Positions 5,406 through 51,202 of a stretch of DNA of 64,000 bases are shown here, piece after piece; position 1 is the first letter of the stretch, and every line of letters begins with the position of its first letter. The position numbers were made by a program, and so were the translations under genes. The stretch covers positions 20,026,001 through 20,090,000 of the forward strand of contig NW_026889805.1 of NCBI RefSeq assembly GCF_033153115.1, written 5' to 3'. The DNA comes from Saccostrea echinata. Taxonomy: Eukaryota. A model generated the notes under the pieces. It did not search any database and was not told the DNA's origin. It saw only the letters and a list, made by a program, of their open reading frames with translations.

Positions 5406-5437
<32 letters not shown>

Positions 5438-8400: not shown

Positions 8401-11400
8401 GTAATTTCATATACACGCGTATTTAAAATGCATGTTTGAAATAACTCTCGATATTTTTATTGAACTTTTAAAGAAATTTAAGACATGAAATTCAGAGGCA
8501 GACGGAAATAATTCAAGAGTATACAAGAGCGTATGAAAATCAACATAGAAGTCTGGAAGAACAGAGGCGATCTATTGATAAACTACAGAAAAGTTTATCA
8601 GAAGAAAAAAAGGCGAAAGAAAACGCATTAAATAGGTAGATCTACATTTTCGAATTCAAACTATCTGTTTTATTAAAAAAAAAATACTTTTCTCTTCTTT
8701 TGATGTACAAAAACCAATACTGAATCACTTTAGACTTAGTGCTGCTGCAGCCAATAGACTTAGAGACCAGAATCCCGGAATAACAGACCTAAGTGATCCG
8801 AACCGTCCCCTGAAATTAGCTGAAAAGGTGTCCGAGTTGTATGACAACGAATGGACAAACGCCATGGAGAATTTAGAATCTGAGCTTAATATTCAAGAGG
8901 AAAAAGGGATAAAAATTTTATTAAAAATTATTAAAGTGAGTATATCTTCATATTCTATGGTCGATATACAAATGTAATGACCTTGTTTGCAAATACCAAC
9001 AAGGGTCGGATTTTGATAGACAATGCCAATTGTTTGGCCATTGTTTTTATACTTAATTTTGACTACGGATTACTCGTTTACCCAATCAATGTAGAGGGCC
9101 AACGTACGGCAGCTGTTACCAATCGACAGGGGATACTTACTCCTCCCAGGCAACTGATCCCTCTTCTGGTGTCGCAAGGGGTCCGTGTTTTGCTTTCTTT
9201 TATGAGATTGACCACTGATCGTTATCTTCTTTAATTATAATGTTATATGTATGTTTAATGCATTAAAAGCACTATGATTTAAGGATCTCCGCTTTATCCG
9301 ACAGGAAGGATGATTCTCAAAAATCATTGTTTAATTTAAAAAGTCTCAAAAGGAAGCTTGAAATTGAAATATTTTCATACAACAATTTTCATATTATTAG
9401 GCTTAATTCTCAATATGATTCAATCTTCTTTGAAGTCTTAGAAACAGTATTTTTAAAAATTTCACATTTTTACCCCATTCAAGAACAACAATAATAATTT
9501 TTAGATAAATCGAATTTCTTGACAAAAAAAAAAAAACAAAACACACAAACAACAAACAAACAAACAAAAAAACCAAGCGCAAGCAATTTTTTTTCCAAAT
9601 GTCTGGATACCTATACTATTTTATCCTAAAATATATTTGTTGATCAAATTTTGATTAGAAAATGCATAGCTGGTGCATTTATTCCTGAAATTATATCTAA
9701 GATTGATAATTTTCTCTTTATAATATGATAAACTTTAATGATGAACTTTGAAGAAATACCGTCGGTAAATACTCGTACACATTTCTTTTTTGAATTCAGA
9801 GACATTTTTGTGAGCCTTATCTATTATTTAACTGCTGCTTGTCAGAATCTGAGGAAGTTGTCTTCAATATTTAAAGCAAATACTTTTAAAAAAGAAAAAA
9901 CATTAAATGTATCCTAATTTGCGTGGCCGACGGAACTTGACAAAGAAAGGGGTCACTTTGACCATCGTATTTTTTTTCGCCCACCTGTCTGTGTATCTGA
10001 AGAAATCTCATTCACCTGTAAGCCCTGAGCACTTGAATTTGAGGTGCTAAATTGTTACCAGTTTTACCAACCAAATGAAATAAATAAGCTCTTCTTTGCT
10101 TAAAAAAATAATTTTTTAATGTGTTAATTCAAGTCCATACTTGTTAATCACTTAAAACAAATTGTAGTTTTTTGGTAGATAAATGTACACGTTGTTTTGC
10201 AACACATTGTATCATACATGTTAAGAAAATTTTTTTTAAGTGTTTATGTTTCAAAATTGTTATTAAGGTATTTGGAAATTAGCCACTAAAATAAAAAGTA
10301 CTTTCTCACAAAGGGAAGTAAAGTACATACTGTAGTGTCTGAGCTTTTCAAATAATATAGAAGTACATGTACTGGTACTATATTCGTACCACTGCAATAC
10401 AATGTACTTACACATCAGTATTTATTATTTTAACGTTAGGGACGTACAAATTTAGTCATTTAACTCAATTAGACATTATGTGTCACATTATTTGTGAACA
10501 TCAAGATTTTACAAACTTAATGTTTTATATGAAAAAACACTGTAGAATTAATTGTGAATTAGCTAAGTTTATAAATTTTGACTATTAAAACTATTTATAT
10601 TTATACAGAATGTTTTTGACGCATGCGCTGAGTTTGGAGACAACCACCTACAATCCTTCCCTGACATGTTGATTTTACCTCCATCTTTTATAAAGAGAGG
10701 GGAAGAAAAAATGGTAATTTTAAAATATGATAGAAAATTAAAAGCAAGGCTTACAAATATTCTAATTACCACAGTTGATATTATGTCTTTGTTAGCGTCA
10801 CATACACCAATAAAGATGTTTAAAATCAGCTGTGGGGACTAGATTCAGCGTATACGGGGAAAACAACCAACATAATAAGTAATATGTGTCTAGCAACCCC
10901 GACAACATTCCTTTGTACTCTCAATGCATTTGTTTTTATTTTAGATCAGCATTAGAGATCTACCCTCTGAAATGCTTAAACCAATGAAAGATTTTCGAAA
11001 ATCGCATGCAAAACACGCAATAAATCATTTGCAAAAGGTATGTAACATGTATTTTTTCTAAACATTATGATGTTTTATTATTTGATATCAATTACCGATT
11101 AAAGAACTACGCACGCTAACTCTCCATCCCCGCTTACATTTTACACCCATTTATTTCAATACTAATGTCAATTTGGCCGTAAAATATTTGTTGAATGCAA
11201 AGAACAGTTCAATGATAATTGACTGATAATTTTAACGCCAGCGTTAAATAGTTAATTATCCCTATTTCCAGCTCTTTAAATAAGGGGGGTAGACGATATT
11301 TTCCATTGAAATCGGGCTTTAAAGCATCACCACATTTTTAAATATTCTTGGATATAAACAGATGTTCCTTAAATCTTTTCTAATGTTTTACACATATAAA

Positions 11401-13151
11401 TTAAACATATATTATTAGCAAAATACAATGTTTTTAGTTGCAAACCCTTTTGATATTGGTGAAAAATAATCATTGTTGTAGTTTTTTGTCTGTAAACATG
11501 TGCCTCCCCCCCCCCCCCCTTGAAACACAAAAAGCTTTGGTACGAATTTGTGAAATGACAGTCCATATTACCTGTAAAATGGAATTTTTGTTTCACGGGG
11601 GGGGGGGAGAGAGAGAAAAAGAGAGAGGTGTTTTAAAAATGTTTTCCGTTTCTCTTGATTTCTATAGTGAAAAACTCAAGGTTTACCAAAATTACAATCT
11701 GATTAAAATCAGATCTTTGTTACGCTCCGAAATTCTGATGGTCGCTGTACAGCGACCATCAGAATTTCGGAGCGTAACAAAGATCTGATTTTAATCAGAT
11801 TGCCAAAATTATAGAGTTATCTCTCTTTGTTTTCCCAAAAAAGTAATGTTTTATGAAAATTCATATAAATATCTATATAAGTATGAAAAATCATTCAAAT
11901 GTGTTAACTTTTGAAAATTGACTTGGAGGTAGGCGGGAGAACCATACTATCGTTCGCAGTTCTTTGACGCAATTGCAATACCAACTGGACAAAGCTTTTA
12001 GGCATAAATCTTATTTGAATAAAGATTTGCTAGATAGATGATTCTGTATTTGCCAATGAATTTATGAGTATGTTGGGTGTGAAAGGCACTTGTGTAATTA
12101 CCCGGTGTCATTTTATTAGATTTAATGGAAAATCTAGCATTTACCATATGCTCTTATACGACTGTTTTTTTCTTTTATAACCTTGAAATAAATTTGCAAA
12201 GTCGTGTCACTGTTTCATGCTAGCATAAGTATTTCCCTGTTGTTTTTGTATATATTTCTCAGTTTAATCATTGAAAGGGAAAATGAAGTAAAACTGTGTT
12301 CAGCTCTGAAGATTTATTATTTTCTTTTGAAGTTCTTTTCCACAGATGAAGGAAAGCCGAAATTGCACATAAAGGAAAAAGTATTCAAGGCCTGTGAAGA
12401 ATACGTGAATAAGTGTATAGAGCTTTGCTGGATGATGCGCATTCAAGATCCACCAATTTACATGGAAACAGAATACCCGACTAATTCAGAATTTGACTCA
12501 AATAAAATGCGATCGTACACAAAGGCAGGAAAATTCATACATTTTGTTGTATGGCCTACTTTTTTCCTGCACAAGGATGGTCCACTGTTGGCAAAAGGGG
12601 TAGTGCAAGGGAGCAAAACAGAAATAAAAGATATAAAAGAAATCAATGGCGATGAAGAGTGTAGTTCGTCAAGCTCTGACTCTGACGGTGAAGAATTTGA
12701 TGACGCCCGGTCACGAACAGATTCACAGCCAAGGGATAATCTAAAGAAAACCGCCTCTCAAGATGACGCGGAGCCAAATCAGCAAGGGAATAAAGAAATC
12801 TCACAAGAAGCAGATGGAACATCAATCAATGAAACGAATGACAAACCAGAGGGACCAAATGACACCAACGACATCGCAAAGGGGCCAAATAACACCGACA
12901 CCACACCAGAAGAACCAAATAACACCGACACCAAACCAGAAGAACCAAATAACACTGACGAAAAACCAAAGGAACCAAATAATGATTTGCATATCAACCA
13001 ATCAAAGCCGCAAGGAAGTGAAGCAGCTGATCAAGAGGAACCAGTTAACTCAGACGAGACAGAGGGAGAAGACGGGAGTGAAAGGGCTGCTGAGCAGAGA
13101 GATGCATCCGTTGACAAAACACAAAATAAGGCAGAGGAAACAGATGTATAG
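2569..13151 (+). CDS. MIEAP/SPATA18-domain coiled-coil protein, paralogue 1 (about 580 aa; acidic low-complexity tail; 5' end uncertain)
   Basis: GT-AG exons that stay in frame: 2569-2673, 2778-2882, 3206-3268, 3632-3712, 8474-8635, 8734-8935, 10609-10713, 10945-11037, 12333-13151. They encode a K/E-rich coiled coil, then RLRDQNPGITDLSDPNRPLKLAEKVSELYDNEW, then CIELCWMMRIQDPP...FVVWPTFFLHKDGPLLAKGVV. This resembles the SPATA18 pattern C..AFAMQ..EPP...VWPAL....VIMKG (recalled, not searched). A phase-compatible start exon is possible at 674-684 (ATGTTTATGAG|gt), or the gene may start upstream of the window. Confidence 0.82.
3921..4950 (+). mobile_element. Helentron-associated non-autonomous element (HINE) with about 166-bp internal satellite array
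   Basis: Starts TTTTAGTTCACCTGAG..AGCTCAAGTGAGC, then a (GTCY)n-like tract, about 5 tandem units (AAAATCTTCT anchors near 4169, 4329, 4493, 4660), and ends with GGCCCATGGGTCTCTTG and a T-run. This is the architecture of oyster Cg170-type satellite-bearing elements. Confidence 0.8.
5256..6638. mobile_element. hAT-type non-autonomous element nested in the mariner
   Basis: Termini CAGGAATGGGGT / ACCCTATCCCTG, subterminal AATTAC repeats, 8-bp TSD TCTCGCGA / TCTCGGGA (one mismatch). Confidence 0.75.
6709..7572 (-). mobile_element. HINE-like element nested in the mariner
   Basis: Subterminal inverted repeat TGTGTCGCCTG (6733) / CAGGCGACACA (7557), adjacent (GACA/GACG)n microsatellite, internal AGGTCAAAGGTCAAGG motifs. 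Confidence 0.65.
9055..9232. repeat. Fragment of a common oyster interspersed repeat
   Basis: GC-richer CGACAGGGGATACTTACTCCTCC..CTGATCCC..GGGGTCCGTG tract recalled as an abundant ostreid repeat; class not determined. Confidence 0.4.
11101..11966. mobile_element. MITE (Kolobok-like termini)
   Basis: Imperfect TIR AAAGAACTACGCACGCTA / TATCGTTCGCAGTTCTTT with TTAA / TTGA flanks. Confidence 0.55.
11695..11802. mobile_element. 108-bp perfectly palindromic mini-transposon with 9-bp TSD
   Basis: Perfect inverted repeat centred on TGTACA, flanked on both sides by CCAAAATTA. Confidence 0.85.
12835..12985 (+). repeat. Coding 30-nt tandem repeat (EEPNNTDTKP-like, about 5 units)
   Basis: CCAAATAACACCGAC units with a 30-nt period in the tail of paralogue 1. 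Confidence 0.85.
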
Positions 13152-22634: not shown

Positions 22635-22649
22635 CAAACCGAAAGTAGA
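22635..22649 (+). promoter_or_regulatory. IRF-element-like 15-mer upstream of the paralogue 2 ATG
   Basis: CAAACCGAAAGTAGA, identical to 47510-47524, ending about 20 nt before the predicted ATG. Confidence 0.5.
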
Positions 22650-22668
22650 TACTTTTTACCGCCTTGTA

Positions 22669-25600
22669 ATGTCGAAGAGAAAATCTAATGAGGAGTGGGG
22701 AGATTCAGACAGGCCTAGAAAGAGGTTATCTAAAGGGTGAGTAAATCATCCATTATAATCATACCTGTTTTCTGGAAAATTAGTAGATCATAATGACATT
22801 CATGAAACAGTCAAAGCTATTTAATTTGTACCTGTCCTCGGTCCGGAACAATATTACATCTGTAATAGTGATAGTTTTATGTTGTTTTAATTATTATGAT
22901 ATTCAAATGTATAATTTATTAATTATACATTTATGAATATGCCACAACTGATTTTAAACTCTGAAGTGCATGTATTAATCTGTGTGTCAATCATTATTGA
23001 CAAAGACAAATAATTTAAAATCAAATATCAATAATATTTAATAAAATAATTTATCAAATAAAATAATTAAATAAATTAAATAAAACAAACTAATTGAAAT
23101 AAAATAAACAATCAGCTAAAACCTTAGATCCACTCCTTGTTTTATCCCTACACCTGTAATAAGCTACCTGAGTAGAATTCAACTTTCTTTAATCCTATTG
23201 GTCAAAACTTTTACCTCCAAATTCTGGACATGAGACAAAGACATTATTCAGATTGCTTTCAGACTGAGAAGACATGATTCTCATATATAAATTATAACTT
23301 TTACTGTGAACTGGCAACCAGATCCTAATATTACATACAATGATAAAGTGCCAGTAATTGTTGTTAAAACAAAAGTACCTGATGAGGCACTCTGTTCCAT
23401 AAACAGGGTATTATTATCCACAGATATTATCATCTACATTAACAAATAAATCACCATCAACGAACCCGCAGGTGTCTTGGTTATATTTAACATCTTTACC
23501 TGACCCCTGTTACACATCGACGATTATAATGATGTTCTAATCAATCTTGATGAAGATATATAGAACTTTTCAGTTGCACTGTTTACGTACATCAAGTCTG
23601 CCTTGAAGAGTTAATTGTTAGAAACATAGCATAGCTAGCTACAGCTGCACACAGGTAACTTCTTTATTGTGGGCTTCATAGTGAAGTTCTCGATGAATGT
23701 TGAAAGCATTAAGGAAGCCTCGCTAACGTAATGGTGTCACTGTACTGCTGTCATTGTCAACCAAGTCCGTTTTAGATTGTGTAAAACACCTCTTGAGTAA
23801 AGCGGATTCTTAGAACAAGAGCATGTTTTACAATGCTAATCTGTTTTGCCCTTCCTTCTTTCTTTCTTATCAAGCTGTACATTTTCAGCTTTCTGAAGGT
23901 TCGTGTGCTCTACTTGGTGTCCTGTAGTCTAGTCTCGGAGACTTTAATATAAGCCGTTGTGAGTCTGTGAATTTCTCCAAATATGTGAATGTCAAGGACA
24001 ATCGTTGTAGATTCCCTGTCAACGAGCAAGTAACATACTCTTAGTTTTTACCCTGATTTTGACATCCGTACATTGATTTGGGTCACTCACTTCCATGTTG
24101 GTCTCTCCTGGCTTTTCAAGGTTTCCTCGAGTGTTTAAAATCATATCCGCCTACCTACTCTATCACCTTTTTGCACTAAGCATGAGATATTCTTCAAAGT
24201 TTACAGTAAAAATTTGGTGGACTGTTAGTCCCCGAGGGTCTCTACAGCCCAGTAGCTAAGTACTTCGGTACTAGCTTGAAAATAATTTAATTGCTGTGGT
24301 AAAATTCAGAAATTTATTTCAAAATTAAGGATGATCTCCCTCATGCATAGCTCTAGTCCTTCGATGTATTTGGCTCCAGTCTTTGGCACACCTTTTTCAG
24401 CTCTTCAAGGTTTTTTTTTTCTTTTTATATAAATATTTCGGATTTCCAAACTTTCGCATGAGCATCACTGAAGAGACGTAATTTGTCGAAATGCGCATCT
24501 GATGCATCAAAATTGGTACCGTATATGATTTAATTACATTATATATATATTGCATGTAGTTGAGGGTAACATGTTACCCTCAACTACAATCAACATTTGT
24601 TACACGTATATAAATCTGAATGTTTTATACAAATACATACAACAGTGAACCGGGCGCGCAAAGTTCTGCGAAATCTTTTTTTTTCTGTTGTTGTTGTTGT
24701 TGAAATAACACCCATCATTAAATAATGTTGACTGTTGCTATGTTCTGTCAAGCTGGAGAGCGTGATTTCATCTTTCAGAGGGTAACAGTGTTTTTTAACG
24801 AATGTACCTTGACGAATCAGATTTAATTAATTTACATGTATATGAAGGATTACACTGAAGTGACGTGTTCAGTAGTAAAGAAAACAGCTGTATTTGAAAT
24901 CTTTATTTAGCACAACTGTAGACGATGCATTGAACAAAATAGAGGAACAGGTTAAAGTAGTGAGACAGGAAATCCAAAATCAGGAAAACGTCCAGGGTCT
25001 ACACGAAACCATCGATCAACTGCAAAGGAAACTAGAAGCCGAAAAAAGCGCTAAAGCAGAGGCGCTTAAGGCTAAAGAAGAGGCCTTAAACAGGTTATGA
25101 TGATAGAAATAAATATTCAGAAAAAATAATTTCAGTGAATAAATTTTTTTCAGTGATGAAAATGAACAATTTTAAGGGGTTTTTTTTAACAGATTGAGCT
25201 CTGTGGCTGCAAATCGACTTCGAGATAATAATCCTGGTATTACTGATCTCAGTGACCCAAATCGACCAATCAAATTGGGAGAAAAAGCTTCTGAAATTTA
25301 CGACAACGAATGGACCAATGCTCTAGAAAATCTAGAGGAATTACGAAAAGCGACGGAAACTGCTTACGATGAAGAGAAGGATGTGATGCTTCTTCTGAGT
25401 ATTCTTACAGTAAGCACATTCCTACCTCAGTAGCAAAAGAACTCTTGTCTCTCTTTCTTTTCTTTCTAATTTTCAGACGCATTTAGCTATTTTTGCAAGG
25501 GAAGTGATTTTTTTTTTGTGTTCATAATGTTTTGCAGGATATTTTCCAGATGTGTAGAGCAGATGCCTTGGAACATATTGAGAACATATCTCGAGTGTTA

Positions 25601-26466
25601 CTCACGCCATCTTTTGTGAAAATCAAAGTACTAGTATATTAAAAAAATATCCTTTTTATCAAAATAAGTTTTCATTTCGATTAAAAGTCGCTCTTAGGAA
25701 AGTAAAATTAATGAATTAACTTAGATTGATCAATTTTTCAGCATATTTTGAACGAATAATAAAGCAATTCAAATTCGAATCGCAGATAAATTCTTTTGAT
25801 TGCGTAGATAAAGAAATGTTTAGAAATGAACTTAATTAAATCAGGTTTTATTAAAATCACGTGACAATTTTTGTATTTGGTTTTTTTTTCTTCTTACTCA
25901 TGCAGCATAAACCAAAAGTCCCCTTGGCTTTTTTGAAAGAAATTAAAGATTTTCGAAAACAGCATTGCACAGAATCGATACTCCAGAGTCTATCGGAGGT
26001 AAAAAAAAACAAACAAATCAAAACAAAGTAACACTGTTCTTTGTACTATTGGTATATGTAATATTCATAAGATAGAAAATAATTACTGCAGTATAAGTAT
26101 TGATTGTTGATTGAGAACCATTGATATACGTGAATATACTTGTGTTGGTTTTAGCATTATATGGAAAAGCTCCCGGAACAAAATCCAGATCAGCTTACTC
26201 CAGATGTTATTAAAGCCTGCAAGGAGTATATTCACAAATGTGTAGAACTGTCATGGTTGATGTCCATACAAGATCCACCTATGTGTTTAGAATGGCAATT
26301 CAAGGGCGGCGATTTCAGATCGGATACAATGCGATCTTTTACAAGGAGCGGGGAAAAAGTCCAGTTTGTCGTCTGGCCCGCCTTGTATCTTCATGATGGC
26401 GGACCTTTGGTTACCAAAGCAATTGTTCAAGGCATGAAAACTGGAAAGAAGAAAAGACGAAATTAG
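22669..26466 (+). CDS. MIEAP/SPATA18-domain protein, paralogue 2 (320 aa)
   Basis: Exons 22669-22736, 24911-25093, 25193-25409, 25538-25627, 25906-25998 and 26155-26466 sum to 963 nt with an open frame. Same core motifs (DLSDPNRP..YDNEW; CVELSWLMSIQDPP; FVVWPALYLHDGGPLVTKAIV) and same core intron phases as paralogue 1. The first exon is the least certain. Confidence 0.85.
24213..24535 (+). mobile_element. Terminal-repeat fragment of a Penelope-like retroelement
   Basis: Sequence surrounding the minimal hammerhead; minimal HHRs are characteristic of Penelope-like terminal repeats. No RT or endonuclease ORF recognised; boundaries approximate. Confidence 0.55.
24462..24505 (+). ncRNA. Minimal type I hammerhead ribozyme (Penelope-like element type)
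   Basis: GCATCA-CTGAAGA-GAC-gtaattt-GTC-GAAA-TGCGCA-TC-TGATGC. Stem I GCATCA/TGATGC, CUGANGA core, stem II GAC/GTC, GAAA, palindromic short stem III (ATGCGCAT), AUC cleavage triplet ending at 24499. Confidence 0.8.
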
Positions 26467-26919
26467 TTGTAATGAATCTAAATAAAGCGAAAGAAATTAA
26501 TGTTAAATATTCATTACAACAATAATTTGTATTTCAACAATATTGTATATTTTTCATAATATAGAACTCATAAAAGTTTAATGGATGAGGTATTGTTAGT
26601 TTGTAACAATATAGTTTTTATTCTTACATATGTTATTAAGCACTTATTAAATATACCTTGCTGATACGATCGATCTTCCATTTTTAGAAGCTCTGATATG
26701 TAATCCTCCTCACATCTTCTTGACTTTACATTAAATCAGTCAGACTCAAGTTATAATAGTATGTACGCCTTCAGAACCCCTTAAATATGTATGAAAATAT
26801 TGCAAAATATTGCAGGTAATGGTTCAGTATGTGACCTCAAGAAAACCCTTCAAAATAATGTTTTTTAGTGAAGGAGAATTTTAAATGTAACATTCAATTC
26901 CAAAATATATTATTATCAT

Positions 26920-40000: not shown

Positions 40001-43000
40001 GCCTTTCCGACATACTCTGAAAAGATTTTTTTCTGAGCTTGCCGAAATTATCCAGGAAAGTGGTGTAACTAGATGTCTAGAATCTTGGCATTATATGACC
40101 TAAGTTTTTCTTGTACTTTTATGTGTAGGTTAGACAATAAATAAAAAAAAATCAGAATCCGGATCTAGACTGGTATTGCATGTCTCTAACGCAAGAAAAG
40201 TTAACGTACATTCGCATGCTATACATTCTGGTTGCAATTCTCCAGTGAGTAAATATTCATTTGTTATTTTTGAATGACCAATACGTATTCTAGAAATAAT
40301 CACTTCGTCTTGACGTTTCAAGCCGAAATCAGATGATTTGTTGACTTTGTTTTCTATAGCATAAAGCTTACTTGTATCACAAAATTCCCAATAAATCAAG
40401 ACAAATGAAATACCCATTTAAAATTCCTTTTCTTTCAGACAATTTTCCAGTAAAAGAATAGTAAAATGATTGAATGTTTTCTTTAACAAGAGGCCAAAAT
40501 GGCGCGAAACTCCGAATGATGACGGAACGTCATAATCAGTTTTACCTGTGACGTAATGTGTTAACAGTAGGCCCAAAATAGGCCCATGGCACTTAACGTA
40601 GTTTTTGAAAATAGGCCCAAAATAGGCCCGCGGCACAAAGAATGTTAATGACACTACATTGCGGATTTCAAACAAGTGGTATTTATTGTAATAATGTTCA
40701 GTAACAAACTCAGCATCATGGAGCCATGCACTTGTTTTATAAATCCAAGTAGTGAAATATGGTGCAGAAGTTCCATTTTCCTTATGAAGAATACATGTAA
40801 CTCGTTTACTGTAGTTGCTGGGAATACAGACACACGAGGAAATCATCGAGCAGGAACAAGCTCTTGCTGCCGAGGAAAATTTTCGCCATAACACAAACAG
40901 AGATCTGAGGAGATGGAATGACGCCTTTGAGGTGTAAGTAAAAATGGTTAAAACATTATTTTATACACCGATATTGTTGAGGGTCAAAACCATGAAATTT
41001 ATTTAAGAAATAATGTATCATTTTTAAACATCTATCGGGATATAAATACGGGTTGGTCACGAGATTCGGGCTTTATGGTAAATTTGATCTCGTACCAACC
41101 CGTATTTATATCCCGATAGATGTTTAAAAATGATACATTATTACTTATATTTACATTTATGACTTATTCATATTTTATGTTTTCCTGATTATAATCTTTA
41201 ACGCGTGAAATGTTTTATTTTTCAAACTCAACGGCATGTATTTGATCCATTGATTGCGCGTCGACCCTTTATGACGTCACTGAGAAATTACGTCGAACGT
41301 TTATGACGCGAGGAACCCGTGTTTATACGGATATAGATACGCATTGCTTTTAATAGTGTTATATAAAAGAAAACATTTGCAAATGTAAATATACTAAAAT
41401 GAAACAATTTCTTCAGGAAGAAAAAGTATGAAGACGAAACCAACCAGCTTAACAGTCGATATCAAGACGAATTGCATAAAATTAGAAAAGAACATGAAAG
41501 TGTTCTAAGAAGGTAATTCTTATATATGAAAGCAGGTTATTTGTTTCTATCGTATTGTACAATTAATTTCCTTTGACTGTTGAAGTGCAGTTTTTTGTTT
41601 TAAAAATATTTGTCACTTTCAGTTTGAGAGAAAAGGAAATTCAACTGAAGAGGTAATGTTACTCATTTTGAAAGATTATTTTCTTGAACAGTTTCATTTA
41701 CTTGTTGCTAAAAACTAAATATTCATTACTCCAAAGTATTAACTGAAGCATATCAAACATTGTCCTAGGCGGGGGAGAAGGAAGCGTATTTTAAACTTTG
41801 AAATTTGTTTATTGCAGTTTATCTGAAGAAAAAGAAAATCTGTTGACAAGGTAATATGAATGATTAATTGAATGACTTTCTTTTGTTTCAATTCTTATTT
41901 TTATTAATACATAAGGCTCATCATGAATAACAAGAAATAGTAGGTAACATTAATGAATACGTTTTTTAAGATCTGATAAAATGTTATTATTTGTAACACT
42001 GTTCAGTAAACTCGGACTCTCAATGCTTTCATATTGAATACATAGAATAAACATGTTGAATATAATAACATGTATTAAGAAATTTCAGAGGGAGTTCCAC
42101 AGCATTTTAGTTTTATTCAAATCATTAATTTATAGGCTAAGTCAGGTTGCAGGAGCCAAATTACGAGACAATAACCCGGCCGTGTCCGACCTCAGTGACC
42201 CCAATCGACCCCTGAAAATTTCAGAAAAAGTCAGTGAGCTTTACGACAATGAGTGGACAGACGCAATGGAGATCTTGGAGAATGACTGCAGTGAGACCGA
42301 GGCAATAGAAACACTACTCACCATTATTCTGGTAAGTTTTATTTCTGACCAACATTGAATTTCAAGGTATTTAAAAGAAGAAATATATTAAAAAGCATTT
42401 TTCCTTCTTTTTTAAAGAAATGTTTTAGACTTTGTAAAGATTATTCCAGTTTCCAGTTGAAAACTATGACTACGGCTCTCGTTCTAAATGAAAAGGTAGG
42501 TTATATTTGATTTTGTTTCTTTAAGTATATAGGATATGGAATTTTTCTTAAAAACAGGTTATTTTATATCTATTACAACACTTCATTTTACAGCTGACAC
42601 CTGATCTTACTTTAGCAGAAAAATATGCCAAAGATATACAAAAGAGTTCCTCAGCCTGGATGTTGAGCGATTCTTGTCTACATTCTGTAATGCTTTGAAT
42701 TCCTATTATATCATTTTGTGCACTTTATTCATATACTTAACAGAAGATACAAAGCAACGATTCTGTTTCTTTGATTTTCAGATAATATGGCAAGAAGTTG
42801 AAAAGGCTGTTGGAATGCAAAATGCAAATAAATGCAAACCTTATATTCACAAATGTGTGCAGTACTGTTGGTACATGTGTATCCAGGACCCTCCAATGAC
42901 TGCAGTTGCTTTCCAGAAAGGGACAGAATTCAATAGCAATGGAATGAAGTCTTTTACTAAAATAGGACAGTTTGTTGACTTTACAGTATGGCCAGCATTA

Positions 43001-43690
43001 TACCTTCACGAAAACGGTCCCTTGCTTTCAAAAGCAGTAGTACAAGGAACCAATGTTCAAGGCACCAATAAACCACCTCCAGAAAAAAATTACGAGGACA
43101 GGAAAAATAAACAGACCAACAATCAAGAAATTCCTACTAGAAATTACCGAAAAATGGAACCTCAGAACTATCGACCCGCGGAAACGGCTTACCGTGCGAT
43201 ATCAGATGATCGGTACATCGAACCACATCTTGAAAGAACGAGGAAAGGATACCCTGAAATTCGCGATACCAAACATGGAAATGTTGGACAAAGAGACTAT
43301 CGACCAGAATTTGTTGAGAGTCAATACTCAGACCCCCTGCCAAACAGAGGCCAATACATGTCGTACAGTTCCCCACAACCTCCCCATCTGCCAAACAAGG
43401 GGCGATCACAGCATGTTCAATATACTACACAGACTGACATTCCAGCATCAGTTTATAGAAATCAGGCATATCCTTCAAACACGAGATATGAGCATCATGG
43501 GAACCACCCACAATATAGACCTGAAAAACAGTTTCTTCAGGCAACCCATAGCCGGAGTGCTCCAAATGAGTATTATAATGAAACTTATGAACAAGCTCCT
43601 CCTAAAACACAATATAAAAGACACGGCAATCCGCATGCGTCACGAACATATTTCAAAAATAACAAGGAATACAGATCAACAGAACTATGA
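37019..43690 (+). CDS. MIEAP/SPATA18-domain protein, paralogue 4 (608 aa; Y/P/Q/R/H-rich tail)
   Basis: Exons 37019-37122, 37287-37455, 40815-40933, 41417-41512, 41623-41652, 41818-41850, 42136-42331, 42418-42495, 42594-42686 and 42782-43690 sum to 1827 nt with an open frame. The 119-, 33-, 196- and 78-nt exons match paralogue 3 in length. Confidence 0.87.
37184..37197 (+). promoter_or_regulatory. IRF-element-like motif in intron 1 of paralogue 4
   Basis: AAAACGAAAGTAGA, 62 nt into intron 1. An ETS-like ACAGGAAGT also lies at 37001-37009, just before the ATG. Confidence 0.45.
37835..40644. mobile_element. 2.8-kb non-autonomous TTAA-inserting (piggyBac-like) element in paralogue 4 intron 2
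   Basis: TTAA at 37831-37834 and 40645-40648, imperfect TIR CCCTTTTGCTGCCG / CGGCACAAAGAATG. The uninterrupted target site survives in an adjacent duplicate at about 37694-37740. Contains a CAGGCCCG..CGGGTCTG MITE at about 38406-38714. Confidence 0.7.
40200..40400 (-). pseudogene. C-terminal fragment of an RNase H-bearing non-LTR retrotransposon (I-group-like)
   Basis: RQDEVIISRIRIGHSKITNEYLLTGELQPECIACECTLT matches the RLRIGH...PxCxxC zinc-knuckle region of such ORF2 proteins. Confidence 0.7.
41001..41150. mobile_element. Long hairpin MITE
   Basis: Near-perfect inverted arms of about 55 bp (AATAATGTATCATTTTTAAACATCTATCGGGATATAAATACGGGTTGGT). Confidence 0.75.
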
Positions 43691-44282
43691 ATTTAGATAT
43701 TTAAAGTTATGCTACTTGTGTCAAGAAATTGAAATGAACATGCTTAAATGCATAACGTTTACCCTTTAAACATCCGGAATGTTCTCAGCGCAATACTCAT
43801 GACAGCCATATTCTTAGTAAAAAGGAATAGCCATTCCGTTTGCAATCGATTTATTGATTATTTGCAAAAGAACTGATATCACAATGTTTTGTATTTGGAA
43901 TGTATTCTTTGGATATATTTTATGCGTCCTATTGTATATCTTGACCAGAACAAAAACACTGAACTATTGAATTCACGTTATCAATGTATATGATTTAAAT
44001 TTTAAATAAATTAAGAATATTCAAGATATAAGGATTGGTCTTTATGACTTCATAGAAAAGTCACATTTAGCTAAAATACATTTTTATCATCGGTATATGC
44101 ATACAAGTTCTGAATTTTCGCGTTACGCTTTTCAATATATATTTATATAGATTAACATTTAGCGCGCTTAATTCTGATTTGTATCCTACTATAATGTATG
44201 TTGCACGAAATATTTTTTTTTTTCAATACTTTAAACTGTACACACAGTCACAGATTAGGAGACACAGATTAAATATATCGGG

Positions 44283-46509
44283 TTAGTTATTTAGGAAATC
44301 AAATCTGGCTCGAAACGTCTGCCCAGTCGTTCTCTCGCTTGCTTCAACAGTAAGTTCTGTCTTACCAAAAATAAAACCAACAGACACGTTGTTTGACGCT
44401 TCCACGATATTACCGACATTAAGTATCATTTCTCCAAGGGGTTTACAACCTTCGTCGGTGACAAACATCGGATCTGTTTCCGATGACGAATACACCCTTA
44501 CGCGACTGACTGAAGATCCTCTTCCCATTGTAAATGGAACTGAGTGTACACATCCATGCTCCACTGACTCATCGCATTCCACATATTTGTGAAAAATGTC
44601 TTTGCACATAATCCCATTTGCTGTCGCAATTCTCTTTTCAGGTGGATGGTGTCCCTCTATAAATGGCTTGCTGATGGCTATGCCAAATGTAGAATGAGAA
44701 ATCCTAGATCTGATGGAGAGCGGCTTATGGCCGAATATGACAGCTCCTTTTAAGACCGTTAATCCAGCGTCACCAGGCGTTATTATCTTAATGTGGGGAA
44801 ACTGTTGCCTCAAGGTTTCTTGCACAATTGGTGATTCTGCAAATCCACCAACTAAAAGGAAAGTTTTCGTACCCCGAACATTCTGTACCAACAACACCTT
44901 TTGAAGATGCTCAATGAGTTTATCCAGAGGATCTCTGAAAAAGCCTTTCACCAATTCCGAGTCGATTTTAATTTTGTCGGAGATAGAACTTATTCTCTTG
45001 TAATACATTTCGTGATTTTCAACAGCTTCCTTGAAAGATCTGGATTTCATCTTCTCATACAATTCGCGTAAAGAAATAGGAACTTTGATTACAACGCGTT
45101 GTGGCATGTCTTCCTTGCATGTAACAGTTCGTTTCTTTAGTTCAAACTCTCTGAAAATATCCAAATAATCCCCGCCATGCTTTGAACGGAATTCTGCCCA
45201 AACCTCTTCTTCCACAATGTCGATCAAGAACTGTTCATAAGCTGCATCTACCTTTGTTCCACCCCAAGCCCCGCCTGTTGCACGGTGTAATTCCCTTAGT
45301 GTGCCATCATTGTCCACCTGATGGACGGTAATATCAGCTGTTCCTCCTGCAATTCATATTGAAATTGAAATCCCTTGCTAAATATAGGTTTTAAATAAGT
45401 TAACTATATAAAGTTTGACATTAGAATTTAACAGCAAATTATTTTTTTTTAAACTTTTCATACGAATAGTGATATATTCTAAAATGTGTACAAAGCTTTG
45501 AATTTGATGCAGCTACCTCCGAGATCGATCACCATGTACTTCGAACCCGAGTCAAACACATCAGCCCCAGTTGCATCTGGAATATGGCGACAAAAGACAG
45601 AGGCTGCTTCAGGTTCAAGTGCAATAATCAATTGGTCATTAGTAATATCTGCCTGAAGTTTAAACAAATTTGTTTTACTAGTATTTGGTATAAAACGGAA
45701 AATTTAATGCATATTATAATTGTTATTGATACGTCCTTTTCATATGAAGAAGAAAAAAGTGAACATTATGTTAAGACATCAATCTTTAAATCTAATACAA
45801 ATGTACACTTCTATATTTGAAAATAAAAATGACACTGCTTTTTAACAATGTAATTTCAATACATTTTTTTTTGTCAAAATAAAACCTTTTGTGCTGCTTC
45901 TCTCATGAATTGTTTTGCTGGCTCTGACCATATTGCAGGTACAGTTAAAACCCAACGAATTTCTGAATCTTCTATCTCGAAACCTTGCTGCTTCATTATA
46001 TTTAACGCATGGCTCTTAAGGTATGAAATACCGTGCCCAAATACAACTTTTGCTGGCAACTCCTTTCCGCTTGCGTCAGCTATTTTAGTATCCCTAGAAA
46101 GATGCTGTCGACAAAAAGAAGAACAATTAATTGTTCATTTCTTTTTCTGAAGGTACTTTGTACTTGATGATAATGCATTATCTTCTATATTTACCGGATT
46201 TCTGTGAAGAAGCATTTTGAATCGTCTGAAGAAATAGTATTCGTGATGCTCATCATCCACAGCTAGGTCTGCATACGTGTCCTCTGCTTCATACCCAAAC
46301 TTGTAGAATTCTTTATTTGGCTTCAGTAAGAGTGAACTCGGGGTTTTGGAAGAAATAAGTCCTCCTGAGGCAGGAATCCAGTTGGTAAAAGCATATATTT
46401 TTGTGGGGTCATTCTGGAATTGATTTAGGAGGGAAAACGCATACCCAGAGTACGTTGTCCCAAAGTCGATGGCTACAACAACTAAAGGACCTTCGTCTTC
46501 ATCAGACAT
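44283..46509 (-). CDS. HSPA12: Heat shock 70 kDa protein 12-like (atypical Hsp70, 577 aa)
   Basis: Coding exons 46509-46195, 46104-45886, 45652-45517 and 45346-44283. Actin/Hsp70 ATPase motifs IDFGTTYSG, IDLGGGTADIT (split by an intron) and LVGGFAES. HSPA12 signatures WVLTVPAIWSEPAKQFMREAA, ALEPEAAS and GGAWGGTKVD. No EEVD or helical lid. A versus B subtype cannot be assigned. Confidence 0.95.
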
Positions 46510-46537
46510 TATTATCAATGTGTCTGCTAGACAAAAA

Positions 46538-47167
46538 AAAAGGAAGCTCATGGGCTACAATGCTCATTTGGATCTCTCATCCTTCTAAAGAAACAACATC
46601 TTTATTGTGGCTTTAACTTGAAGTCTTTGTTATCAAGAATTTAAATAAGGCCTGGTGTTAAGTTTACAAAATGTAGATCCAGTTCTTCCTAATTTTTTTT
46701 ATGAACAAATGATGTTCCTGTTCTTCCTAAAAAAAAATTATGAACAAATGATGTGCAAAATTTTGTTTCCTTTTATAGTCCTACTTTGGCCCAAGAAGTC
46801 AAGATTTTATCAAAATTGAATCTGCACTATACTTTGATACAACTTATTCCAGAAATTAAGTTTTTACATATTTAGCCTCTTCATTTATAAAATCAAGATT
46901 GATCTTTGGTGGCCCCTTCTCAGTTACAAATGTAATTATTTAACAAAATTCTACATGTACATGTATATGGCAATGCCTTTATATCAAATTCCAAATTGTG
47001 ACCGCACTGTTCTCAAAGTTTTTTCTGCAAAATATACTTTGTATTCCATTGAAGACTTTATTTCCATTTGTGACTAAGTCCGAACCCTGGTTAAATAAGA
47101 TCTATAATTTAGCTTTTCTTGATTATCTCTCTTTGATGAGCACAGGGCCTTTAAATAAACAGTTGAA

Positions 47168-47198
<31 letters not shown>

Positions 47199-47240
47199 AT
47201 TCCATAATTGTGATGAAAGTATGGAAAATGTTTGAGGTGG
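46538..47240 (-). mobile_element. Degenerate HINE/satellite in the HSPA12 5'UTR intron
   Basis: Reversed terminal motif AAGCTCATGGGCTACAATGCTCA and satellite-unit remnants such as TGCCAAATTTGGTTGAAATTG. Confidence 0.55.
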
Positions 47241-47458
47241 AAATAAAACATAGCATTGTTCAATTCATCATTTACAACAAAACAGATACTTGGTGTTGAC
47301 ATTTAATTCGTACAGTTCGGTGATTCTGCATATTTTTACGTTTCAAATCTTTTAATAAATACTGTGTATCAAAAAGTGACCAAAGTTATCTTCCAAAAAA
47401 CTCTTTAAAAGAAAAATTAACATATTTTATGATAAGACGAAAGACATGTGATTCTTAC

Positions 47459-47545
47459 CTGCGCATTTACTTATTAAAATTTATTGTGGGGTTTTTTCAG
47501 AGTTGGTACCAAACCGAAAGTAGAAATTTTCAGTTTCGTTTTGAT
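47459..47545 (-). promoter_or_regulatory. Putative HSPA12 non-coding exon 1 and promoter with IRF/ISRE-type sites
   Basis: Minus-strand donor CAG|GTAAGA at about 47459 pairs with an acceptor about 20 nt upstream of the ATG. Just upstream lie CAAACCGAAAGTAGA (47510-47524) and TTTTCAGTTTCGTTTT (47527-47542), whose reverse complement contains GAAACTGAAA, the GAAANNGAAA ISRE core. Confidence 0.55.
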
Positions 47546-49608
47546 TATTCATCCTTGTTTAAATAAAATGAAGTAGGCGATGGTCGATAACAACTATATT
47601 CGCGACAAGTCGACCAATAAACTACACACAGTAGATTGAAATTGTCTTTCGGTGATATAATAAAACAAACTTGAAAACTGTCTCTTTTTATTTACAAAGT
47701 TTATTGGCAACAGAAATATACAATGAATTTCATGTATCCCTTTTCTTTTCCTTTTTGGCAGTTGCTTTTGGCTTCCATTTCCTTCTCTTATTCTTCGAAA
47801 TTCGAGTTCTTATGCTGAAGTCTTAAAAAGTAAAACGATGATAATAAAATTTAAAAAAAAGTCAGAATGCCTTTTTCTACTTTTTGATATTACAAATATT
47901 GATGAAAAAATAGGATCGACTTCCTCCCTCAATGTGAAATGGATCCATTTTTTACCGAGGAACTTAAAATCAATATAATATTTTGCAAATAAACCATCGT
48001 CTTTACATTAATTTAAAAAAGGATATTTTTTGAATAAAGTACTTTGAAGCATAACCCTTTTTTTTTAATATTCTCTCTGTGATTCACTATTTTTTGCTCA
48101 GTCACGTTGAGACAACTGTAAGAAACAATCAATCAATATAAAAAATCCTATATGTTACATGTACAGTGTACGTTAGATCATATTTATATTATTATTTTGG
48201 CAAAATTTTATAATCAGCTAAGTTCCGGACTTTCTCTTAACGTTCTTTTATTAAACGTGACTATCGCCGTATGTAGTGTGCTTGCCTACTTTTGAAGATG
48301 TAATGTATTCACGGGATCACGCTTCACTAAGGAACCATTTTCTCAAGAAAAATGAATTGAAAATACATGCTAGTAAACAAGGGATTATAATGACCATCCT
48401 AATCGAAAGGTTTCGAATCATTCCGGTTAGAAGAATATATGAGACATGCTAATTTTAACACGTTTATATCTCTTGAAACTTGATTTACTCTATTCCTACC
48501 CAAATGAATTTCTGTAAAGGGCGTTTTCCTTCTCAAATGTTTCTGGGATTTTTTTTTATGTTTTTATATACGACTGATGTCATTAAAATCTATTCTGATA
48601 CACTTTATGGGTGAATTCAAAACTAATTACCACCAAACTGAATTTTTTAAACATATTTTTCACTTATATCATCATATTGTACATGCATTCTAGTTAAAAT
48701 TCCTAAAGTTGCAATATAATAGACAATTGGATAAAAAACTAACTTTCAGAATTTTTATTTGAAAAAAAAGATAATATCACTACATCCTAAAAGACTTTCT
48801 AAAATACATAATCAAAAGAAATTATAGTTCATTATGCATCAAAATGGTGTATCAGGGATATAAATGATTAGATCTCAACCTTGAATAAGTTTCTTCTCTT
48901 GTATATGTGGGAAAAAATGGCTTTTTGATTGTTATTTTACATTATATTTTTCAATTCTGGTTTAAAAAGTTTTAATATGAAAGAAATATTAAACAATAAA
49001 ATTCCCCCAAAATTACTTTTTGGTCCATTTAAGGATATATAACGGAAACAGAAATTTGATGCATGGATTGACATATATTTTTTGATTGATTTTGAATAGA
49101 AATGACAAATAATAAATCCCTAAAATATTAAGAAATCGTAAGATTTCGTTTGTGCTTAGATGTGCAACTGTGTGATGTTTTCTATGTAATTCTATACCAA
49201 ATTTTGCACATATGTTTTAACATTATGACAAAATCTTACAAAATTCTCCCACTTTACATGGCAAACATTGTTCAGGTTACCTATTTGAATATAAATCTAT
49301 GAGAAATATTGTTGATTTCCGAAAAAAGTTTGTTTGTGTTATTTACCCTTAAGTCAAATTTTTAAATCTAAGCCGAAAAAATTGATATACAAGTTCTCTT
49401 ATAAAAAATACCAGATTTTGAAGTGACCCTATTTTACATAATTGCGTTGCTAACCTGACATTTGATATGTTATTTTATTGAACATTGTCTTAAAAATTAT
49501 AACACACAATAACCCATTCTTAATTTGTAAATCAGTTCGTCGTTTTGATATTTTTTTTTTATCATTTACGGCAAGTTTTGTCATATTTTCAATACTACAA
49601 AACATGAT

Positions 49609-49926: not shown

Positions 49927-51202
49927 TGTTGCACTCCTGACTGCAGTAAAATTAAAAGTTAAAATCATATAACTCAAAAATGCATAATGTGTTGGCAACA
50001 TCAAGTGGTAATGAAATTGTGCAATATTTATAGTCCAATACTTCATAATTAAAACACATGGACGTATTTAACCTTGGTTTTATAACTTGAATTATTCCCT
50101 ATTTATGTCCAAAAACTTGCTAAAAGATATATTTAGAAGATAAAATATACTTTATAGTATATTTTCCTTCACAAGATAAACACTGTAAGCAACTGAGATC
50201 AACCAGAAACATTCTACTCATCAATTTTTTTCTTTATATTTATTCATATTTGATCAGCAATAATTTTTTATTGCATAAAATTTGTTGCACTCCTGACCAA
50301 AAACATGGGAGTCTTTAAAATAGAATTGTGAAGCGATAATTACATCAGAGCTTGTTCTGTTGTTTCAGTGAAGTTATGTGGAATTATTTGAATTTTAATA
50401 CATGTAATAACAATTTTGCAGTGTTTTTATTTTTTACCTTCACAAAAATATCAAAGAAAAGATTAAAAAAAAACACATTTGAATTGATAAAATTAAAAAA
50501 CGAGAAGGATTTTGATGATAAAACTGTCAATAATTTAGCACTAAATTGTTAAAATAGATCATTATTAATTAAAGAATATTTCCTAACATGAATAGAAGAA
50601 GTCTTTTCATCATATAGCATGAATCTTTAAAAAATATATTGCACCTCTGACCATAGAAATATAGATCTGAAATACAGTCAGACCCTGTAATTGATAAATT
50701 TATTTGGTAAAAATTATCTCTGTGTCTTTTTTTCCAAAATAGAAATCAGAGAATCATATACTGATAAAAGTTTTTTCATGCTGGGGAGCAAAATATCATA
50801 TATATGTTGCACTCCTGACATCATTGGGTATGCACAGATACTTGACTCTCATTAATGCTGCCTGTGATTTATATAACATTTTAAAGTTTTAAATTGTACA
50901 TCAGTTATTGTTTTACTCTTTGAAAATTCTTTTTTGACTTAATTGTCTTTAAGATTTTTAAAATCGATGTTTTTGGAAACACTACATTTTATATGTTGCA
51001 CTCCTGACATAGTATAACATTTTTTTCAGCATCAGCCGTGACCACAACTTGGTCAAACAAAAGTTGCTACAATTAAAGCTCAATACTTTGAATATTATCA
51101 GGAAAGTCTTTATTTCCAACATAAACTATTATTATTTATTTCATAGATCTTCAAAAAATATTGAATTTTCAAAATGTCACAAAAAAGTGTTGCACTCCTG
51201 AC
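49927..51202 (+). repeat. Dispersed 15-mer TGTTGCACTCCTGAC, 5 exact copies plus degenerate ones
   Basis: Exact copies at 49927, 50283, 50805, 50994 and 51188; variants near 50637 and 49445. Confidence 0.85.

What the first reader, a model, noticed from the sequence alone, without database searches (positions are those of the whole stretch)
22635..47524. Same IRF-type 14-mer at the 5' end of three MIEAP-like genes and of the unrelated HSPA12
Seen: AAA[A/C]CGAAAGTAGA at 22636 (just before the paralogue 2 ATG), 31615 and 37184 (early intron 1 of paralogues 3 and 4) and 47511 (HSPA12 promoter). The paralogue 2 and HSPA12 copies are identical over 15 nt, and I saw no other copies by eye. The surrounding intron sequence of paralogues 3 and 4 is not visibly conserved, so the motif stands out. 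Known: AANNGAAA(GT) is the IRF recognition element, and oysters have IRFs and a dsRNA-inducible antiviral response. Inference: the cluster is a regulon.
Basis: partly seen in the sequence, partly recalled or inferred. Interest (0 to 1): 0.78.

Follow-up and report, generated by a model that had tools for sequence, protein, structure and literature searches.

The report
ISRE-like promoter motif, oyster stress genes
A 14-letter DNA word that resembles an interferon-response element sits at the starts of several HSPA12, Mieap-like and TRIM-like genes of a rock oyster and probably lets them be switched on together, but neither binding nor induction has been measured.

Summary
AAAMCGAAAGTAGA occurs exactly four times in the window, all on the + strand and all in single-copy DNA. 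Each copy lies at a gene's 5' end: 19 nt before the paralogue 2 ATG, 48 and 61 nt into intron 1 of paralogues 3 and 4, and at the predicted start site of HSPA12. HSPA12 is on the minus strand, so its copy is antisense to the gene.

The genome is Saccostrea echinata. It holds 909 copies, mostly in repeat families. Of 96 non-window copies that could be listed, 5 lie within 10 kb of an HSPA12-like exon (0.22 expected, P 3e-6). Four lie within 30 kb of Mieap-like genes (0.23 expected). Three precede tandem B-box/NHL genes. Neutral sites between the paralogues are near saturation, so the word appears to be under selection.

It reads as an ISRE with a degenerate first half (cAAA-NN-GAAAGT), and the genome has four IRF loci. 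IRF binding and induction by virus or dsRNA were not tested. The word is mostly sense-oriented, just after TATA-like boxes, which also fits a start-site or leader element.

Paralogue 1 and neighbouring Mieap-like genes lack it, so "the cluster is a regulon" is only partly supported.

The parts
22636..22649 (+). Motif copy AAACCGAAAGTAGA, 19 nt upstream of the ATG of Mieap-like paralogue 2 (sense)
   Evidence: The 414-bp flank is single-copy in the genome.
31615..31628 (+). Motif copy AAAACGAAAGTAGA, 48 nt into intron 1 of Mieap-like paralogue 3 (sense)
   Evidence: Exon 1 is confirmed by NCBI protein P0127. The flank is unique; a repeat fragment starts only at about 31703.
37184..37197 (+). 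Motif copy AAAACGAAAGTAGA, 61 nt into the 164-nt intron 1 of Mieap-like paralogue 4 (sense). An ATAAAT lies 27 nt upstream and a GT donor-like site 11 nt downstream.
   Evidence: The flank is single-copy. A possible alternative first exon is inference only.
47511..47524 (+). Motif copy AAACCGAAAGTAGA at the HSPA12 5' end, antisense to the gene. It is the left arm of a 32-nt imperfect palindrome (12/16).
   Evidence: The flank is single-copy.
47529..47542 (-). Sense-strand variant AAAACGAAACTGAA (11/14 to the motif). It contains the canonical GAAACTGAAA.
47559..47565 (-). TATA-like TATTTAA, 23 nt (start to start) before the sense variant. It predicts a start site near 47535.
   Evidence: match at window 47532-47565, minus strand. 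The start-site position is inferred.
47459..47542 (-). Predicted non-coding exon 1 of HSPA12. The donor is GCGCAG|GTAAGA, and intron 1 runs about 46529-47460.
   Evidence: the X2 contig carries 12 letters beyond 46528 that equal window 47461-47472. The upstream limit is not measured.
44283..46509 (-). HSPA12A-like coding region. Exons: 46195-46509, 45885-46104, 45516-45651 and 44283-45345.
   Evidence: Spliced contigs. NCBI protein P0001, 577 aa, 100% identical. Pfam HSP70, 28.1 bits.
22669..26466 (+). Mieap-like paralogue 2
   Evidence: PF16026 E 1.6e-15; exon map.
31466..34782 (+). Mieap-like paralogue 3 (NCBI LOC133172903, 396 aa)
37019..43690 (+). Mieap-like paralogue 4. Its 3' end converges on the HSPA12 3' end.
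   Evidence: PF16026; intron 42687-42781 and expression.
8735..13151 (+). Mieap-like paralogue 1 (5' end not found). It has no motif copy.

Best explanation
The 14-mer is a selectively maintained cis-regulatory element. It sits at or just beside the transcription start of a subset of three bivalve-expanded stress/immune gene families in Saccostrea echinata: HSPA12-like, Mieap-like and B-box/NHL TRIM-like. Its sequence is an ISRE/IRF-E with a degenerate first half-site ([c/t]AAA-NN-GAAAGT, followed by AGA). Most likely one of the oyster's four IRF-family factors binds it, as a pair on the palindromic HSPA12 version. The genes that carry it would then be raised together after viral or dsRNA sensing.

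Shown: the word's positions, its non-randomness, its single-copy context, its linkage to these gene families, and the presence of IRF genes.

Inferred: the exact start sites, IRF binding and inducibility.
For: 1. Chance is excluded. There are 4 copies in 24.9 kb against 909 in 923 Mb, so 0.002 such clusters are expected genome-wide.

2. The four copies are not in repeats. All four flanks are single-copy.

3. The word appears constrained. Four-fold sites are identical at 24/49 between P3 and P4, and at 15/46 between P2 and P3/P4. Yet the word is kept at 14/14 and 13/14, while the flanks do not align.

4. It recurs independently elsewhere in the genome.
- Of 96 listed non-window sites, 5 lie within 10 kb of one of 116 HSPA12-like large exons, against 0.22 expected (P 3.3e-6).
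- A sixth site, on C27, lies 1.7 kb upstream of HSPA12-like exons 1-3.
- Four of the 96 lie within 30 kb of PF16026 hits, against 0.23 expected (P 8.5e-5).
- These HSPA12-like genes are only 33-34% identical to the window's protein in the large exon, and 59-60% in coding exon 1 for the C27/C30 genes.
- Three copies precede tandem B-box/NHL genes on C2.

5. The position is consistent. It is sense-oriented, with a TATA-like box 23-33 nt before it and an ATG 32-36 nt after it at C22:10427417 and C25:8824182. The same TATTTAA spacing occurs at the window's HSPA12. HSPA12's 5'UTR exon is supported by RNA 39 nt away.

6. The form fits an IRF site. It contains the IRF core AANNGAAA plus GT (PMC7819612, passages). 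The HSPA12 site adds GAAACTGAAA on the other strand.

7. The factors exist. The genome has four IRF loci. Oyster IRFs activate mammalian ISRE reporters (PMC5557890, passages), and CgIRF1 is said to bind ISRE (PMC13524488, introduction passage).

8. No heat-shock element lies within 200 nt of any copy.
Against: - No binding or expression-response data exist here. The RNA contigs only show that P4 and HSPA12 are transcribed.
- The 14-mer has one perfect GAAA; the first repeat reads CAAA or TAAA.
- The AGA tail lies outside the IRF core quoted in PMC7819612.
- The word is nearly always sense-oriented and sits at the predicted start site, which is not required of an IRF site and fits an initiator or leader element equally well.
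- None of the four IRF loci has the word in the 10 kb fetched around and upstream of each.
- P1 and the two neighbouring Mieap-like genes in L070 lack it.
- Only about 7 of at least 117 HSPA12-like genes carry the exact word.
- TATTTAA-N15-21-AAAMCGAAAST is not enriched genome-wide: 14 sites against 23 for the reversed control.
- Most genomic copies are in repeat families.
- The C27 and C30 genes are recent duplicates (96% identical), so they count once.
- The main texts read gave no statement that HSPA12 or Mieap-like genes are induced by virus. Supplementary gene lists were closed.
Confidence: 0.5

Rival explanations
1. It is a start-site (initiator-type) or 5'-leader element of a special promoter class, and not an IRF site. 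Transcription would begin at the C|A just before or inside the word. The word would then be read by a core-promoter factor or another sequence-specific factor (for example a PRDM1/Blimp-like zinc finger, whose sites overlap IRF sites; recalled). Alternatively it acts in the first nucleotides of the mRNA.
For: - It is sense-oriented in P2, P3, P4, the C27, C30, C22:10427417 and C25:8824182 HSPA12-like genes, and 3 TRIM-like genes.
- Position -1 is C in most copies.
- A TATA-like box lies 23-33 nt upstream in four gene promoters. By eye, one also lies 20-25 nt upstream in repeat families A, D and F.
- An ATG follows within 6-36 nt in P2, L074, L077, L078 and repeat family G.
Against: - The exact copy at the window's HSPA12 is antisense.
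- The P3 and P4 copies lie inside intron 1 of the annotated models.
- TATTTAA plus the core at this spacing is not enriched (14 sites against 23 for the control).
- The predicted 5' hairpin of the HSPA12 leader is unremarkable (-10.8 kcal/mol, z -1.27).
- No start site was measured.
Confidence: 0.3
2. The word has no function. It was inherited by tandem and segmental duplication of Mieap-like/HSPA12 blocks, and its survival is luck.
For: - P3/P4 are sister genes, and C27/C30 are 96% identical duplicates with alignable flanks.
- Mieap-like and HSPA12-like genes travel together.
Against: - Neutral sites are near saturation while the word is intact.
- Flanks of the independent copies do not align.
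- Carriers include HSPA12-like genes only 33-34% identical to the window's in the large exon (59-60% in coding exon 1 for the C27/C30 genes), and an unrelated B-box/NHL family.
- The enrichment P values are 3e-6 and 8.5e-5.
Confidence: 0.08
3. The copies are eroded fragments of interspersed repeats that carry the word, with or without later co-option.
For: - 24 of the first 30 genome copies fall in 5 repeat families. 21 of 30 copies with a non-A next base fall in groups, including a 9-member family with the word twice in tandem.
- One family lies beside LINE gag/endonuclease ORFs.
Against: - The four window flanks have no second copy in the genome.
- By eye they do not resemble the flanks of any family seen.
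- Their position is tied to gene starts.
Confidence: 0.07

Closest known systems
Vertebrate ISRE / IRF-E (GAAANNGAAA(C/G)T), for example the ISG15 ISRE, recalled as GGGAAACCGAAACTG
   Same: It has the AANNGAAA core with a CC or AC spacer and a GT or CT tail. It lies next to the promoter. The HSPA12 site has two such units in inverted order, one of them containing a canonical GAAACTGAAA.
   Different: The first half-site starts with C or T instead of G. A conserved AGA tail follows. The word is mostly sense-oriented and sits at the predicted start site. No IRF binding or interferon-like induction has been shown. The ISG15 sequence is recalled from memory, not from a call.
Invertebrate IRF targets: shrimp Vago and the oyster CgIFNLP promoter (PMC4602278 from the search listing; PMC13524488, introduction passage). 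Also IRF motifs upstream of poly(I:C)-induced genes in Nematostella (PMC8476169, passage).
   Same: These are invertebrate IRFs acting through ISRE-type sites on antiviral genes.
   Different: The carriers here are HSPA12-like, Mieap-like and B-box/NHL genes. None of the texts I read names these as IRF targets.
Transposon-borne interferon-inducible enhancers (MER41-type; recalled)
   Same: Several repeat families carry the same word. One carries it twice, beside an ETS-like CCGGAAGT.
   Different: The gene-side copies here are in unique DNA. No evidence shows that any repeat copy regulates a gene.
Class-specific initiators such as the TCT/5'TOP start of ribosomal-protein genes (recalled)
   Same: It would be a fixed word at the very start of transcripts of a functional gene class, in sense orientation.
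   Different: It is A-rich, not pyrimidine-rich. The start sites are unmeasured. One exact copy is antisense and two are intronic.

Membership tests
ISRE / IRF-E | IRF DNA-binding-domain core AANNGAAA | tested here: met
   All 4 copies read AA[AC|CC]GAAA followed by GT. The consensus is from PMC7819612 (passage read).
ISRE / IRF-E | Two or more GAAA repeats (GAAANNGAAA) | tested here: not met
   The 14-mer has one GAAA; the upstream unit reads cAAA or tAAA in P2, P3 and P4. Only the HSPA12 site has a true GAAACTGAAA, on the minus strand at 47528-47537. It is therefore filed as ISRE-like, not as an ISRE.
ISRE / IRF-E | IRF-family factors present in the organism | tested here: met
   PF00605 gave 8 exon matches at 4 loci, all above the cut-off.
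ISRE / IRF-E | Bound by an IRF protein | not testable with these tools
   Needs EMSA, DAP-seq or ChIP.
ISRE / IRF-E | Carrier genes induced by virus, dsRNA or an interferon-like signal | not tested
   The runs found were unlabelled contigs. Main texts gave only 'Hsp70 family' and TRIM induction in C. gigas. Supplements were closed.
ISRE / IRF-E | Promoter-proximal position | tested here: met
   All copies lie within about 170 nt of the first exon's start or end. The same holds in other loci.
Heat-shock element | Alternating nGAAn units (GAANNTTCNNGAA) | tested here: not met
   No match within 200 nt of any of the four copies.
Interspersed repeat fragment | Flanking sequence present in many genome copies | tested here: not met
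   Only self-matches for three of the flanks. For P3, repeats match only from 75 nt downstream of the motif onwards.
Initiator-type / 5'-leader element | Overlaps mapped transcription starts at a fixed distance from the TATA box, in sense orientation | tested here: inconclusive
   TATA-like boxes lie 23-33 nt upstream in 4 promoters, and the word is mostly sense-oriented. But no start site was measured, and the TATA-plus-core pattern is not enriched.

The most novel reading that the evidence does not exclude
The word marks an interferon-independent, IRF-driven 'ISG-like' module of lophotrochozoans. Its core would be the recurrent HSPA12 / Mieap-like gene pair, which earlier notes of this scan propose as an Hsp70-cofactor pair, together with B-box/NHL TRIM-like genes. 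In this reading the element works as a combined start-site and response element, and several transposon families carrying the same word have been spreading it to new promoters.
Probability: 0.22. Interest if true: 0.75.

Novelty: new variant of a known kind. Interest (0 to 1): 0.55.

Why it matters
Bivalves have expanded the HSPA12 family (89 members in M. gigas, PMC11268181) and the Mieap family (PMC8382680). How these genes are controlled is unknown, and so is what most of them do.

A defined 14-nt element shared by subsets of both families and by TRIM-like genes gives three things. It is a concrete handle for reporter, EMSA or DAP-seq work. It sorts paralogues into a predicted inducible class and a non-inducible class. 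It also offers a test of whether oyster IRFs control effector genes beyond the interferon-like cytokine.

In the papers I could search, I found no promoter-motif study of oyster antiviral genes and no mention of this word.

Tried and rejected
- Orthologue footprinting was planned from the close HSPA12 hits P0002-P0007 and the O. edulis P3 orthologue P0128.
- IRF loci were checked for the word. It is absent from 4 x 10 kb, which is only weakly informative.
- Neighbouring Mieap-like genes in L070 have no copy. This rejects the idea of a family-wide feature.
- A general 'TATTTAA + core' promoter architecture was tested and is not enriched: 14 sites against 23 for the control.
- An RNA hairpin in the HSPA12 leader is not significant.
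- Heat-shock elements, GAS sites and NF-kB sites near the copies: none, except one NF-kB-like match inside P3's coding exon 1.
- The genes downstream of the C57 and C56:17.74 Mb copies could not be identified within the letters available.
- The six 'singleton' copies were over-counted. Two of them (the places of L026 and L004) proved to belong to groups seen. Truly unique copies are therefore nearer 4 of 30.
- Literature searches for virus induction of HSPA12 or Mieap-like genes gave nothing specific in main texts. Supplementary gene lists, which may hold such data, were closed.

Full report
OBSERVATION. AAAMCGAAAGTAGA matches exactly four times in the window, at 22636, 31615, 37184 and 47511. 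All four are on the + strand, and none of 100 dinucleotide shuffles gave a match. Allowing two mismatches adds only two unrelated sites. The sub-word GAAAGTAGA occurs nowhere else in the 64 kb. It is the only non-trivial word shared by the four 5' regions. Every other 12-mer that recurs four or more times and passed the script's filters lies in a tandem or dispersed repeat. The word's own sub-words fell just under that script's entropy filter.

GENE MAP. The genome is Saccostrea echinata. [quoted passage not shown] Four PF16026 (MIEAP) genes lie on the + strand.
- P1: mid exon at 8735, last exon to 13151.
- P2: ATG at 22669, exon 1 to 22736.
- P3: exon 1 at 31466-31566. The NCBI protein P0127 begins with exactly this exon joined to the next one.
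- P4: exon 1 at 37019-37122, intron 1 at 37123-37286.
- P3 and P4 are sisters (61/88 and 48/62 aa identical). P2 is more distant.

HSPA12 is on the minus strand, with its ATG at 46509. Spliced contigs of four public runs confirm its three coding introns. They also show that P4 and HSPA12 are transcribed. One contig carries 12 letters beyond 46528 that equal window 47461-47472. This reveals a non-coding first exon whose donor is at about 47459.

The word therefore lies 19 nt before the P2 ATG, 48 and 61 nt into intron 1 of P3 and P4, and 39 nt upstream of the last RNA-supported base of HSPA12 exon 1. At HSPA12 it is antisense to the gene. I searched spliced models exon by exon and left out the step of joining exons.

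CHANCE AND REPEATS. The genome (923 Mb) has 909 copies, against 54 for the reversed control. Most copies belong to repeats.
- Of the first 30 copies, 24 fall in five families.
- Of 30 copies followed by a non-A base, 21 fall in groups.
- Two of the six apparent singletons turned out to belong to such groups.
- The refutation test 'part of a repeat' fails for the window copies. The 411-414-bp flanks of all four have only self-matches. A short repeat fragment begins 75 nt downstream of the P3 copy.
- Even at the full density of 909 copies, only 0.002 clusters of four within 24.9 kb are expected genome-wide.

CONSTRAINT. Four-fold degenerate sites are identical at 24/49 between P3 and P4, and at 15/46 between P2 and P3/P4. 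That is at or near saturation. The non-coding flanks do not align beyond 15-21 nt. An intact 14-mer in this background points to selection or repeated gain.

THE WORD ELSEWHERE IN THE GENOME. I listed all 64 AAAACGAAAGTAGAC sites and all 35 AAACCGAAAGTAGAB sites. That gives 96 sites outside the window. I compared them with 75 PF16026 exon hits and 117 HSPA12-like large-exon hits.
- Five of the 96 lie within 10 kb of an HSPA12-like exon, against 0.22 expected (P 3.3e-6).
- Four of the 96 lie within 30 kb of a Mieap-like hit, against 0.23 expected (P 8.5e-5).
- At C30:3472712 the word is 575 bp upstream, in sense, of an HSPA12-like first coding exon (60% identity, E 7.5e-40).
- At C27:3161972 it is 1.7 kb upstream of HSPA12-like exons 1-3. 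These two genes are 96% identical duplicates and count once.
- At C22:10427417 and C25:8824182 the fetched 200 nt show a TATA-like box 24 and 33 nt before the word, and an open ATG 36 and 32 nt after it.
- The window's HSPA12 has the same TATTTAA 23 nt before the sense variant AAAACGAAACTGAA.
- A third family carries the word: three tandem B-box/NHL (TRIM-like) genes on C2. There it lies 395 bp and 1.6 kb upstream of two of the ORFs that were examined.

WHAT IT RESEMBLES. With the preceding base the word reads cAAA-(A/C)C-GAAAGT. That is an ISRE/IRF-E unit whose first G is replaced. It contains the IRF core AANNGAAA (PMC7819612, passages read). At HSPA12 the exact copy and the sense variant form a 32-nt imperfect palindrome (12/16), which includes a canonical GAAACTGAAA. 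The genome has four IRF loci, matching the 'only four IRF genes' stated for C. gigas (PMC5557890, passage). Oyster IRFs activate mammalian ISRE and IFN-beta reporters (same paper). CgIRF1 is reported to bind ISRE (PMC13524488, introduction passage). No heat-shock element lies near any copy.

RESULTS AGAINST THE IRF/REGULON READING.
- P1 has no copy.
- A 10-kb stretch just upstream of the window, holding one Mieap-like gene and the 5' half of another, has not even CGAAAGT.
- The four IRF loci have no copy in the 10 kb fetched around and upstream of each.
- Only about 7 of at least 117 HSPA12-like genes carry the exact word.
- TATTTAA plus the relaxed core at this spacing is not enriched (14 sites against 23 for the control).
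- The 14-mer alone fails the 'two GAAA repeats' criterion.
- The strong sense bias and the start-site position fit an initiator or leader element as well as an IRF site.
- The leader hairpin is not significant.
- No induction data could be obtained. The runs are unlabelled contigs. The main texts I read mention only 'Hsp70 family' and TRIM induction by OsHV-1 in C. gigas, and IRF2/IRF8/viperin induction. Supplementary tables were closed.

VERDICT. The word is a real, probably selected, start-proximal element. It is shared by subsets of HSPA12-like, Mieap-like and TRIM-like genes.
- I put about 0.8 on its being functional in some way.
- I put about 0.5 on the specific mechanism 'ISRE-like site bound by an IRF that co-induces its carriers'.
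- I put 0.3 on a start-site or leader element read by something else.
- The remainder goes to non-functional inheritance or eroded repeats.
- It is a subset regulon at most, not a property of the whole cluster.

Site lists cover only copies followed by C (AAAAC form) or by a non-A base (AAACC form). Earlier notes of this scan report head-to-head HSPA12/Mieap pairs (s1-810032, s1-814300). The first two match pairs I saw. I did not examine the place of the third.

Noticed in passing
G000: C57:6809088/6813450, C30:15691690/15696995, C30:3464315/3473287, C27:3157515/3163660, C25:23696898/23705080: Five head-to-head pairs of a minus-strand Mieap-like gene and a plus-strand HSPA12-like gene, 3-9 kb apart. 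In the window the two families are tail-to-tail instead. On C27 the motif lies between the two genes, as if in a shared divergent promoter.
   Followed up: partly
G000 loci L034, L035, L037, L047-L049, L052, L058, L059 (repeat family 'F'): An interspersed repeat carries the word twice in tandem (the second copy as CGAGAAAGTAGA). A TATA-like TATATTC lies 25 nt upstream and an ETS-like CCGGAAGT further upstream. It looks like a mobile promoter.
   Followed up: no
window 37157-37209: In P4's intron 1 the word is preceded by ATAAAT (27 nt upstream) and followed after 11 nt by CAG|GTATCT. This could be an alternative promoter and a 25-nt first exon. It is untested.
   Followed up: no
window 43690-44283: P4 and HSPA12 converge, with about 600 nt between their stop codons. 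One RNA contig (X1, 3665 nt) runs through both, so their 3'UTRs overlap or abut.
   Followed up: no
window 47165-47203: A 34-38-nt piece is matched by many high-depth RNA contigs that continue into unrelated sequence on both sides. It is a short fragment of an abundant transcribed repeat inside HSPA12 intron 1.
   Followed up: no
window 47694-47823: One low-depth contig (X2, 266 nt, depth 3.7) lies here with half its length, 170-300 nt beyond the HSPA12 start region. It may be an upstream or divergent transcript.
   Followed up: no
window 5054-8351 and 19990-20948: Two copies of an element bounded by inverted AAAAAGTTCGCGAA ends, with transposase-like ORF fragments (INWIDCFS.GREMVKN). They lie upstream of P1's mid exon and of P2.
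   Followed up: no
window 4100-4580, 14627-15931, 27142-27622, 49927-51192: Four tandem-repeat arrays, with units of roughly 165 nt, 15-35 nt, 155 nt and 190-520 nt.
   Followed up: no
L062 7639-9999 (C2:32.435 Mb): One of the three B-box/NHL genes is cut after 165 aa by an endonuclease/reverse-transcriptase (LINE-type) ORF.
   Followed up: partly
L061 5910 and 6071 (C2:28127809/28127969): Two exact copies of the word face each other 160 nt apart in unique DNA. No gene could be recognised within the fetched 10 kb.
   Followed up: partly
L073 (C57:8323085, minus strand): Here the word is preceded by further GAAA-type units (GCGTTTCTTTTCC, then TGAAACGAAC). The arrangement is inverted, like the HSPA12 palindrome. 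The downstream gene was not identified.
   Followed up: partly
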